From NCBI RefSeq assembly GCF_032444005.1, contig NC_091287.1, positions 563,409,481 through 563,458,000 of the forward strand: 48,520 nucleotides of DNA, given 5' to 3'. The stretch is from Ranitomeya imitator (taxonomy: Eukaryota). This document shows positions 4,122-5,157 of the stretch, in pieces. Under the pieces are notes generated by a model. The model worked only from the letters and a program-made list of their open reading frames with translations, did not search any database and was not told where the DNA came from. A program made the position numbers and the translations under genes. Position 1 is the first letter of the stretch; each line of letters begins with the position of its first letter.

Positions 4122-4360
4122 ACCGACCACAAATGGCTCCTGTTACCTGAGAAAGGAGAGTAATGAATGATCCCCCAGAATTCCGAGATCTGTGCAGCAA
4201 GGGGTTAAATAAGAAGTCCCTGAATTCACAGCAACTCACTGCGAAATGCCCAGATTATTCCTGAGGGTTTCTCACCATCTCCCTCGTCACCAGGCGCAGA
4301 GCCCCGGGCGGTGCGAGCAGACACCTCGGGGAGACGGGAGAGGACACCGGAGCAGCCGCA

Positions 4361-5147
4361 GCTCTTATAGTGAGGGTGTGGGGGGCTCTTATAGTGAGGG
4401 TGTGGGGGGCTCTTATAGTGAGGGTGTGGGGGGCTCTTATAGTGAGGGTGCGGGTGGCTCTCATAGTGAGGGTGTGGGTGGCTCTTATAGTGAGGGTGTG
4501 GGCGGCTCTTATAGTGAGGGTGAGGGTGGCTCTTATAGTGAGGGTGCGGGGGCTCTTATAGTGAGGGTGCGGGTGGCTCTCATAGTGAGGGTGTGGGGGG
4601 CTCTTATAGTGAGGGTGCGGGTGGCTCTTATAGTGAGGGTGCGGGTGGCTCTCATAGTGAGGGTGTGGGCGGCTCTTATAGTGAGGGTGAGGGTGGCTCT
4701 TATAGTGAGGGTGCGGGTGGCTCTTATAGTGAGGCTGTGGGTGGCTCTTATAGTGAGGGTGTGGGGGGCTCTTATAGTGAGGGTGTGGGTGTCTCTTATA
4801 GTGAGGGTGTGGGCGGCTCTTATAGTGAGGGGGCTCTTATAGTGAGGGTGCGGGGGCTCTTATAGTGAGGGTGTGGGCGGCTCTTATAGTGAGGGTGCTG
4901 GGGGCTCTTATAGTGAGGGTGTGGGTGGCTCTTATAGTGAGGGTGTGGGCGGCTCTTATAGTGAGGGTGCGGGGGGCTCTTATAGTGAGGGTGTGGGTGG
5001 CTCTTATAGTGACGGTGTGGGTGGCTCTTATAGTGAGGCTGTAGGGGGCTCTTATAGTGAGGGTGTGGGCGGCTCTTATAGTGAGGGTGCGGGGGCTCTT
5101 ATAGTGAGGGTGCGGGGGGTTCTTATAGTGAGGGTGTGGGTGGCTCT
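4361..5147 (-). repeat. 24-bp minisatellite derived from the H2B 3'-processing region (~33 units)
   Basis: Sense-strand unit is AAGAGCCACCCACACCCTCACTAT. It begins in the stem-loop 3' arm and ends at AAGAGCTG (4359-4366). Confidence 0.95.
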
Positions 5148-5157
5148 TAGAAGAGCC
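5142..5157 (-). terminator. H2B copy 1 stem-loop
   Basis: CAAA-GGCTCT TCTA AGAGCC-ACCCA. Confidence 0.95.

What the first reader, a model, noticed from the sequence alone, without database searches (positions are those of the whole stretch)
4359..5157. Minisatellite made from the histone 3'-processing signal (H2B copy 1)
In the sense direction the array starts inside the stem-loop. Each 24-nt unit is stem 3' arm AGAGCC + ACCCA cut site + spacer, and the array ends in the true U7-pairing HDE AAGAGCTG. The shared AAGAGC in stem and HDE is an obvious slippage seed. Predicted consequences: the best HDE is displaced ~0.8 kb, the proximal HDE is a weaker AAGAAC, and ~33 extra AAGAGCC arms could compete for the GGCUCUU arm or bind U7. 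I know of no description of VNTRs born from this signal, but could not search.
Basis: partly seen in the sequence, partly recalled or inferred. Interest (0 to 1): 0.85.

Follow-up and report, generated by a model that had tools for sequence, protein, structure and literature searches.

The report
Minisatellite grown from H2B 3' signal
Behind a histone H2B gene of a poison frog, the 24-base stretch that tells the cell where to cut the messenger RNA has been copied head-to-tail 33 times; the repeat is real and has an unusual origin, but it is most likely a tolerated by-product, not a purpose-built device.

Summary
A 24-nt x 33 array (4368-5149, minus-strand sense) starts inside the 3' arm of the H2B stem-loop (5142-5157). 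It ends in phase at a U7-type HDE, CTATAAGAGCTG (4359-4370). It is not an assembly artefact: DNA runs under three species labels hold the repeat, and one also holds the flank and an array/stem-loop junction. A second H2B copy carries 76 units between the same two boundaries. H1 has its own 36-nt x 8 array, also starting in the stem-loop 3' arm. H2A-1 shows the unexpanded layout.

The best reading is unequal exchange or slippage between two TAAGAGC direct repeats 24 nt apart, one in the loop and arm and one in the HDE. All 109 internal junctions are arm-type, as that model predicts.

U7 cuts at a fixed distance from its binding site, so the proximal pseudo-HDE matters, not the distal one. That proximal site is good in copy 2 and weak in copy 1 (AAGAAC). 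Decoy arms barely disturb the predicted hairpin. No selective constraint on the U7-pairing bases was detected.

This scan had already found the same arrays elsewhere in this genome. No published description was found.

The parts
5182..5564 (-). Histone H2B copy 1 coding region. The ATG is at 5564. Bases 5182-5466 are masked N and were left unread.
   Evidence: The visible N-terminus reads [32 protein letters not shown]. The promoter has octamer, TATA and CCAAT elements that align with copy 2.
5158..5181 (-). Visible end of the H2B-1 3' UTR, ending in the ACAAA flank of the stem-loop.
   Evidence: It differs by one base from copy 2.
5142..5157 (-). Histone 3' stem-loop GGCTCTTCTAAGAGCC. Its loop end and 3' arm (TAAGAGCC) are the start of unit 0 of the array.
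   Evidence: Rfam RF00032, 34.2 bits. Predicted stem probability is 0.81-0.97 whatever number of units is added.
5137..5141 (-). ACCCA, the expected U7/CPSF73 cleavage-site motif.
   Evidence: The position is as in the mouse H2a substrates of PMC7026596.
5118..5128 (-). Proximal pseudo-HDE CTATAAGAACC, at the ruler distance from the cleavage site. A G-to-A change at 5120 weakens it.
   Evidence: Duplex with the mammalian U7 5' region is -7.0 kcal/mol, against -13.3 for the copy-2 equivalent.
4368..5149 (-). 24-nt minisatellite of 33 units. The consensus is TAAGAGCC-ACCCACACCC-TCACTA. It is C-rich in the RNA sense and G-rich on the + strand.
   Evidence: GC skew is +0.58 to +0.60. Independent sequencing runs hold tandem units.
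4359..4370 (-). Distal true HDE CTATAAGAGCTG, in phase with the array. Homology with copy 2 stops just after it.
   Evidence: 11 of 12 bases are complementary to CAGCUCUUUUAG of U7. Duplex energy is -17.6 kcal/mol. The flank alignment becomes random after AAGAGCTGC.
34524..36373 (-). Paralogous case behind H2B copy 2. The stem-loop is at 36358-36373, the 76 units at 34533-36365 and the distal HDE at 34524-34535.
   Evidence: Units 0 and 1 are the same types as in copy 1, and 7 unit types are shared.
2467..2506 (-). Unexpanded comparator at the H2A-1 3' end. It has an identical stem-loop, a 16-nt spacer and AAGAGCTG, once.
   Evidence: It is colinear with the H2B stem-loop and unit 0 joined to the last unit and HDE.
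9401..9691 (-). Independent second case behind H1. A 36-nt x 8 array starts in the stem-loop 3' arm, and every unit keeps a full HDE (GCAGAGCTGTATGATC).
   Evidence: Duplex energy is -14.0 kcal/mol.

Best explanation
This is a real minisatellite derived from the H2B 3'-processing signal.

Inferred ancestral state: stem-loop, ACCCA, a 12-nt spacer, then the HDE. The 7-mer TAAGAGC occurred twice, 24 nt apart, once as loop end plus 3' arm and once as HDE core.

Inferred origin: unequal exchange or replication slippage between those two copies duplicated the 24 nt between them. In-register slippage and exchange then expanded the array to 33 units here and 76 units in the paralogue.

Shown: the array lies wholly downstream of the cleavage site, so it is absent from mature mRNA.

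Inferred function: because each unit ends where the next TAAGAGCC begins, the first repeat junction recreates a near-complete HDE (CUAUAAGAGCC) at the normal ruler distance. The gene can therefore still be cut by U7 snRNP. In copy 1 this proximal site carries a weakening G-to-A change. Backup by the next unit, 24 nt further on, is possible but untested.

I read the array as a tolerated by-product of a very repeat-prone locus. It has been carried along and homogenised among H2B genes, and was not selected for a function.
For: - Anatomy and phase.
- Junction types: all 109 internal junctions are arm-type (TAAGAGCC) and only the terminal one is HDE-type (TAAGAGCT). That is what exchange within TAAGAGC predicts.
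- Unexpanded comparator: H2A-1 in the same cluster has an identical stem-loop and is colinear with one unit plus the HDE.
- Same boundaries in copy 2: homology ends right after the HDE, while the promoters and 5' UTRs have diverged.
- Not an artefact: DNA run X7 (organism A) holds the flank and array. X9 (organism B) holds flank contigs 5-8% diverged, array contigs and a loose end that reads from a unit into GAAGAGCCTTTGG, the stem-loop. X22 (organism E) holds array contigs up to 114 nt.
- Spacing: 17 nt lie between the stem and AAGAG, the same as in the mouse H2a substrate.
- U7 pairing: typical units pair with the U7 5' region at -13.0 to -13.3 kcal/mol, like H1 (-14.0) and H2A-1 (-14.9).
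- Signs of neutrality: variation sits at CpG-type and C-run positions 9 and 13. Outside these, distinct variant types number 6 over 10 U7-pairing positions and 9 over 12 other positions (by hand). Identical units cluster locally in copy 2 (lag 1-3, none to 1 in 1000 shuffles reach the observed count). About 44% of the window is tandem repeat. The longest array sits behind a frameshifted H2B.
Against: - The array persists in many H2B copies of this genome (earlier scan notes, unchecked) and under at least three species labels.
- H1 independently amplified its own HDE. Together these could reflect selection, not tolerance.
- The microhomology model does not explain the H1 array: its period is 36, against an AGAGC spacing of 22. 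Something about the hairpin itself may therefore seed duplication.
Pairing energies use the mouse/human 5' region.
- No direct data show where H2B-1 RNA is cut.
Confidence: 0.6

Rival explanations
1. The array is a functional fail-safe. Each unit is a cut-site-plus-U7-site module. If polymerase passes the stem-loop uncut, U7 snRNP can bind any later unit and cleave without SLBP. That gives the 5'-3' exonuclease an entry point, so transcription ends before the next gene. It also buffers mutations in the proximal HDE, as in copy 1.
For: Most units keep 9 of 11 U7-complementary bases at -13 kcal/mol, as good as the single HDEs of H1 and H2A-1. Substrates with strong U7 duplexes are cleaved without SLBP, and the downstream product is degraded 5'-3' by CPSF73 (PMC7026596). 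H2B-1 is followed 1.4 kb later by H2A-1 on the same strand, with no AATAAA or ATTAAA in between. H1 also amplified a full HDE. The array is present under several species labels.
Against: There is no excess conservation of the U7-pairing bases once hypermutable sites are set aside (by hand). Copy number differs freely between copies, 33 against 76. The largest array is behind a frameshifted gene next to an H2A that has lost its stem-loop. H2A-1, H3 and H4 have no array. A 6-bp core plus 3 bp is well below the 15-16 bp duplexes used for SLBP-independent cleavage in vitro.
Confidence: 0.22
2. The array is harmful. Extra 3' arms and pseudo-HDEs compete for the 5' arm and for U7, and the good HDE is too far away. 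The array-bearing genes are therefore poorly processed and on the way to becoming pseudogenes.
For: Copy 1 has a weak proximal site, at -7.0 kcal/mol, which is background level. Copy 2 is frameshifted as assembled. With one unit added, the copy-2 stem-loop probability drops to 0.51. A library guessed to be RNA (X1) has 43-44 nt contigs running 16 nt past the cut site, plus contigs inside the array.
Against: With more units the stem-loop stays dominant, at 0.65-0.95, and SLBP binding during transcription would favour it further. H3 and H4 of the same cluster have equally weak predicted U7 duplexes (-7.7 and -8.6), so a weak value does not show a dead signal. The arrays are reported behind many H2B genes of this genome (earlier scan notes), which argues that they are compatible with H2B supply.
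Confidence: 0.1
3. The array is an unrelated satellite family that happened to land beside H2B, or it is an assembly artefact.
For: The window is full of other minisatellites. Array words are 100-1000 times deeper than flank words in DNA run X7, so the family is large.
Against: Unit 0 is the stem-loop arm itself. The last unit merges in phase into the HDE. The unit length equals the arm-to-HDE spacing. H2A-1 shows the one-copy form. Unit-specific 12-mers occur only in the two H2B arrays of this window. Independent runs hold the tandem units and one array/stem-loop junction.
Confidence: 0.03

Closest known systems
Canonical replication-dependent histone 3' processing signal (stem-loop RF00032, ACCCA, U7-binding HDE)
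   Same: It has the same stem-loop, the same cut-site motif, and the same 17-nt spacing from the stem to AAGAG as in mouse H2a. The HDE core is complementary to the CAGCUCUUUU stretch of U7.
   Different: Here the segment from the 3' arm to the HDE is present 33 times (76 in copy 2). The fully matching HDE is 0.77 kb from the cut site. The HDE in working position is a hybrid, with an HDE 5' half and a stem-arm 3' half.
Classical GC-rich minisatellites (VNTRs)
   Same: Units of 10-100 bp lie head to tail, with strong strand asymmetry (GC skew 0.58), interspersed variant repeats, local blocks of identical units, and different copy numbers between copies.
   Different: The unit can be traced base by base to a functional RNA-processing signal, and the array is anchored to that signal at both ends. 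Allelic length variation is not yet shown.
Satellite DNA between newt histone clusters, transcribed by read-through on lampbrush chromosomes (Gall laboratory; PMC2114352, PMC12046345)
   Same: This is also tandem repeat DNA downstream of amphibian histone genes, and it could be transcribed when 3' processing fails.
   Different: The newt satellites are not known to derive from the stem-loop or HDE, and they are much longer units (hundreds of bp). Read-through is not shown here.
Amplified regulatory signals in amphibian rDNA spacers (Xenopus spacer promoters and 60/81-bp enhancer repeats copied from the gene promoter; from my own knowledge)
   Same: A short cis-acting signal of a multicopy gene is duplicated into a tandem array beside the gene, and the copies retain the factor-binding core.
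   Different: That case involves Pol I promoter DNA elements with demonstrated function. This one is an RNA-level Pol II processing signal with no demonstrated function.
H1 36-nt array in the same window (9401-9691), and the H1 and H2B arrays noted elsewhere in this genome by this scan
   Same: These arrays start in the stem-loop 3' arm and include the U7 site.
   Different: The H1 unit keeps the complete HDE, and its period does not equal the spacing of the microhomology.

Membership tests
Histone 3' processing signal | 16-nt stem-loop with a 6-bp stem, a 4-nt loop and an A-rich 5' flank | tested here: met
   RF00032 scores 34.2 bits against a gathering score of 34, at 5162-5118 on the minus strand. 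Predicted stem probability is 0.81-0.97.
Histone 3' processing signal | ACCCA-type cleavage site directly 3' of the stem | tested here: met
   ACCCA lies at 5141-5137.
Histone 3' processing signal | U7-complementary purine-rich HDE about 12 nt past the cleavage site | tested here: inconclusive
   The spacing is met: 17 nt from the stem to AAGAG, as in mouse H2a. In copy 1 the element reads CTATAAGAACC and pairs at -7.0 kcal/mol, which is background level. In copy 2 it reads CTATAAGAGCC and pairs at -13.3. The full HDE (-17.6) is 771 nt away. A mammalian U7 sequence was used as proxy.
Histone 3' processing signal | Cleavage by U7 snRNP and SLBP in vivo | not testable with these tools
   The only evidence is contigs from a library guessed to be RNA (X1), which cross the cut site by 16 nt. 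They carry no strand or end information.
Minisatellite / VNTR | Head-to-tail array of 10-100 bp units with variant repeats | tested here: met
   Period 24, 33.3 copies, 90% matches. There are 15 unit types in copy 1.
Minisatellite / VNTR | Length polymorphism between alleles | not tested
   Only paralogues were compared, at 33 against 76 units. Logan contigs cannot span the arrays.
Dispersed satellite family unrelated to histone genes | Units found at loci without a histone stem-loop | tested here: not met
   Within the window, CACTATAAGAGC (101 hits) and CCTCACTATAAG (97 hits) occur only in the two H2B arrays. The genome-wide question is not testable with these tools.
Amplified cis-signal arrays with function (for example rDNA spacer repeats, tandem terminators) | Copies retain the factor-binding core under selection | tested here: inconclusive
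   The core is retained in nearly all units, with 8 changes in 920 U7-pairing positions. The number of distinct variant types per position is no lower than in the rest of the unit: 6 over 10 positions against 9 over 12. Recent homogenisation explains this equally well.

The most novel reading that the evidence does not exclude
The H2B arrays (tens to about 100 pseudo-HDE units per gene) and the H1 arrays (full HDEs) together form a transcribed landing pad for U7 snRNP. Nascent read-through RNA, especially on oocyte lampbrush loops, would present hundreds of U7 sites per cluster. That would help to tether or nucleate the histone locus body (the amphibian 'sphere') at the histone locus and keep processing factors concentrated there. 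It would be a cis-encoded RNA scaffold for a nuclear body, built by amplifying the processing signal itself.
Probability: 0.1. Interest if true: 0.85.

Novelty: new variant of a known kind. Interest (0 to 1): 0.5.

Why it matters
Histone mRNA 3' ends are made by one of the best-studied RNA-guided cleavage systems. Its signal is normally a single, tightly spaced stem-loop and HDE.

Here the signal has become the seed of a minisatellite. The built-in similarity between the stem arm and the U7 site (both contain AAGAGC) supplies the microhomology. This is a clear, base-by-base traceable example of how a functional motif can generate a repeat family.

It also provides natural constructs with 1 to about 100 U7 sites behind otherwise similar genes. 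These could be used to test the molecular-ruler rule, SLBP-independent cleavage, termination downstream of histone genes, and whether U7-site density affects histone locus body assembly in amphibian oocytes.

If the array is only neutral, it is still a caution for annotation. The 'best' HDE near such a gene is not the one in use.

Tried and rejected
- Extra stem-loops inside the array: Rfam finds only the one true stem-loop even at E up to 1.
- Decoy-arm competition: the partition-function folds show only a modest effect.
- G-quadruplex pause element on the G-rich template strand: there are no canonical motifs with loops of 7 nt or less. Only long-loop ones (12 nt or less) occur, 9 in array 1 and 17 in array 2. 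This is too weak to build on.
- Downstream poly(A) signals for read-through RNA: there are none between the array and H2A-1. The first one behind copy 2 is 1.8 kb away.
- Selective constraint on the U7-pairing bases: not detectable (by hand).
- Fetching other loci or species: the H2A protein look-up found nothing on record. The H1 look-up found only the source chromosome, without DNA. Searching earlier findings by sequence was blank.
- Higher-order periodicity in copy 1: not significant.
- The paper table in PMC12822217 that pairs GCA_032444005.1 with a Xenopus species: rejected as unreliable. A 2.88-Gb genome is hard to reconcile with the 577.7-Mb contig on record, and another paper names Ranitomeya imitator for this accession.
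- Collection scans of microbial, viral or metagenome contigs were not run. They cannot inform on a frog repeat.

Full report
**What the window is.** The window holds an amphibian histone cluster. On the minus strand lie five genes:
- H2A-1 (2542-2931), stem-loop at 2491-2506.
- H2B-1 (ATG at 5564; 5182-5466 masked and left unread), stem-loop at 5142-5157.
- H4, stem-loop at 7346-7361.
- H3, stem-loop at 8555-8570.
- H1 (9720-10367), stem-loop at 9676-9691.

A second pair lies further on. H2B-2 is on the minus strand with its stem-loop at 36358-36373. H2A-2 is on the plus strand at 37099-37482. The H1 protein is encoded exactly in NCBI assembly GCA_032444005.1, with the same gene spacing as the window. 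A preprint names that assembly as Ranitomeya imitator (10.1101/2024.10.27.620512). About 44% of the window is tandem repeat.

TRF finds a 24-nt array of 33.3 copies at 4361-5149. Read in the H2B sense, the stem-loop is GGCTCTTCTAAGAGCC. Its last eight bases, TAAGAGCC, are the first eight bases of unit 0. Thirty-three units follow with the consensus TAAGAGCC-ACCCACACCC-TCACTA. After the last unit the sequence continues TAAGAGCTGCGG.
- With the three bases before it, this end reads CTATAAGAGCTG (4370-4359). Eleven of its 12 bases are complementary to CAGCUCUUUUAG in the 5' region of mammalian U7 snRNA, whose sequence is given in PMC7026596.
- Its duplex energy is -17.6 kcal/mol.

**The array is real DNA.** The evidence comes from one read-laying run.
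- DNA run X7 (organism A) holds the flank and the array.
- X9 (organism B) holds flank contigs with 5-8% differences and indels, and array contigs. It also holds a contig that runs from an array unit into GAAGAGCCTTTGG, which is the stem-loop.
- X22 (organism E) holds array contigs of up to 114 nt, with 0-5 differences.
- In X7, array words are roughly 100-1000 times deeper than flank words. The family is therefore large. Whether every copy sits behind an H2B gene cannot be told with these tools.
- Within the window, unit-specific 12-mers occur only in the two H2B arrays.

**Origin.** Four observations point to exchange or slippage between two TAAGAGC repeats 24 nt apart.
1. The period equals the spacing between the arm copy and the HDE copy.
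2. All 109 internal junctions in the two arrays read TAAGAGCC (arm-type). Only the terminal one reads TAAGAGCT (HDE-type). That is the product expected from exchange inside the 7-mer.
3. H2A-1 has an identical stem-loop followed once by a 16-nt spacer and AAGAGCTG. It is colinear with the H2B stem-loop and unit 0 joined to the last unit and HDE.
4. H2B-2 has the same two boundaries but 76 units. Homology between the two loci ends just after the HDE, although their 5' UTRs and promoters have diverged. Units 0 and 1 are the same types in both copies, and seven unit types are shared.

Copy 2 shows blocks of identical neighbouring units (lag 1-3, none to 1 in 1000 shuffles reach the observed count). 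Copy 1 does not.

The microhomology model is not the whole story. The H1 array (36 nt x 8) also starts in the stem-loop 3' arm, but its period is not the AGAGC spacing of 22 nt. The hairpin itself may favour duplication there.

**What it does to processing.** U7 snRNP cleaves at a fixed distance from its binding site (PMC7026596 and the work it cites). An HDE 771 nt away therefore cannot direct the cut at the stem-loop. The relevant element is the hybrid made by the first repeat junction.
- That element lies 17 nt after the stem, the same spacing as in the mouse H2a substrate.
- In copy 2 and in typical units it is CUAUAAGAGCC, at -13.0 to -13.3 kcal/mol. This is comparable with H1 (-14.0) and H2A-1 (-14.9), and better than H3 (-7.7) and H4 (-8.6).
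- In copy 1 it is CUAUAAGAACC, at -7.0, which is background level.
- These values use the mammalian U7 sequence. The H1 and H2A-1 HDEs fit that sequence well, which supports the proxy but does not prove it.

Folding shows that the true stem-loop stays dominant. Its probability is 0.81-0.97 in copy 1 and 0.51-0.97 in copy 2, and 0.65-0.75 with five or more units. The decoy-arm idea is therefore weak.

**RNA evidence is only suggestive.** Run X1, a library guessed to be RNA with no organism on record, gives two 43-44 nt contigs over 5121-5162. They run through the stem-loop and 16 nt past the cut site. It gives five more contigs inside the array and none in the 460-nt distal flank.
- In X1 the junction and the array have equal depth, about 4-6. 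In DNA run X7 the array is 10-500 times deeper than the junction. This is not what DNA contamination would give.
- Contigs have no strand and no true ends. Records resembling human DNA, which probably include the H2B coding region, are filtered out.

**Function or by-product.** Variation among units is concentrated at position 9 (A, C or G, next to a C-run) and position 13 (A or G at a CpG).
- The ten U7-pairing positions carry 8 changes in 920 cells. The twelve other ordinary positions carry 22 in 1104.
- Counted as distinct variant types, the figures are 6 over 10 positions against 9 over 12. I see no constraint beyond recent homogenisation.
- The longest array follows an H2B that is frameshifted as assembled, reading [18 protein letters not shown] then a stop. 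It sits next to an H2A whose stem-loop has lost its 3' arm.
- On the other side, the arrays persist across species labels and, according to earlier notes of this scan, behind many H2B genes of this genome. H1 amplified its own HDE. H2B-1 is followed on the same strand by H2A-1, with no poly(A) hexamer in between. A fail-safe cleavage and termination role is therefore plausible.

My weights are: tolerated by-product 0.6, fail-safe 0.22, harmful 0.1, unrelated satellite or artefact 0.03.

**Comparison with what is known.** Searches of the open literature found no description of repeats derived from the stem-loop/HDE signal. This includes a 2026 review of histone gene organisation in over 250 species, which contains neither 'satellite' nor 'downstream element'. 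The nearest known things are:
- classical GC-rich minisatellites;
- the newt histone-cluster satellites transcribed by read-through (PMC2114352, PMC12046345);
- the promoter-derived repeats of Xenopus rDNA spacers (from my own knowledge).

This scan had already noted and followed up the same kind of array on other DNA of this genome (s1-271769, s1-271773). This locus is therefore a further instance, not a first sighting.

**Verdict.** The predicted functional consequences are only partly supported. I class it as a new variant of a known kind, with moderate interest.

Noticed in passing
window 36683-36782 (minus): H2B copy 2 lacks one base near 36737-36738 relative to copy 1. From its ATG (36782) it reads [18 protein letters not shown] and then a stop. 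It is either a frameshifted pseudogene or an assembly indel, and it carries the longer (76-unit) array.
   Followed up: partly
window 37482-37560 (plus): H2A copy 2 has an intact protein, but its 3' end reads GGCTCTTCTTACACCC. The stem-loop 3' arm is missing and the HDE has degenerated (CACAGGAGTCGG, against CACAAGAGCTGACG in H2A-1).
   Followed up: partly
window 9401-9691 (minus): H1 has its own 36-nt x 8 array. It starts in the stem-loop 3' arm and repeats a complete HDE (GCAGAGCTGTATGATC). Units alternate between CAGAGCC and CAGTGCC at the junction, and the latter looks like a hybrid with the terminal flank GATCAGTTC.
   Followed up: partly
window 4036-4122: A hairpin lies about 240 nt downstream of the array end, with 41-nt arms 98% complementary and a 5-nt loop. 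Its apex reads GGCTCT-GATCT-AGAGCC, the arms of a histone stem-loop. Rfam gives only sub-threshold miRNA-like hits. DNA runs X7 and X9 show the fold-back joint.
   Followed up: partly
window 11656-12683: A 42-nt x 24.6 array shares the 13-mer CTCCGGTGTCCTC with the flank lying immediately 3' of the H2B-1 HDE (4330-4345). It may be a further repeat family seeded from sequence near a histone 3' end. There is no stem-loop beside it.
   Followed up: no
window 39783-41420: 24-nt arrays occur in both orientations, with inversion points near 40920 and 41160. Their unit contains GCAGAGCTGT, the same 10-mer as the H1 HDE. Whether this is relationship or coincidence is not resolved.
   Followed up: no
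window 14440-20950: There are about twelve tandem copies of a 535-bp unit. TRF missed them because the period exceeds its 500-nt limit. With the TRF rows, about 44% of the window is tandem repeat.
   Followed up: partly
window 8530-8575 and 7320-7361 (minus): The H3 and H4 HDE regions (AAAUGAGCCGAG and AAGAAAAAGCCAUG) pair only weakly with the mammalian U7 5' region, at -7.7 and -8.6 kcal/mol. Both contain AGCC, like the array units. The frog's own U7 sequence is worth checking.
   Followed up: no
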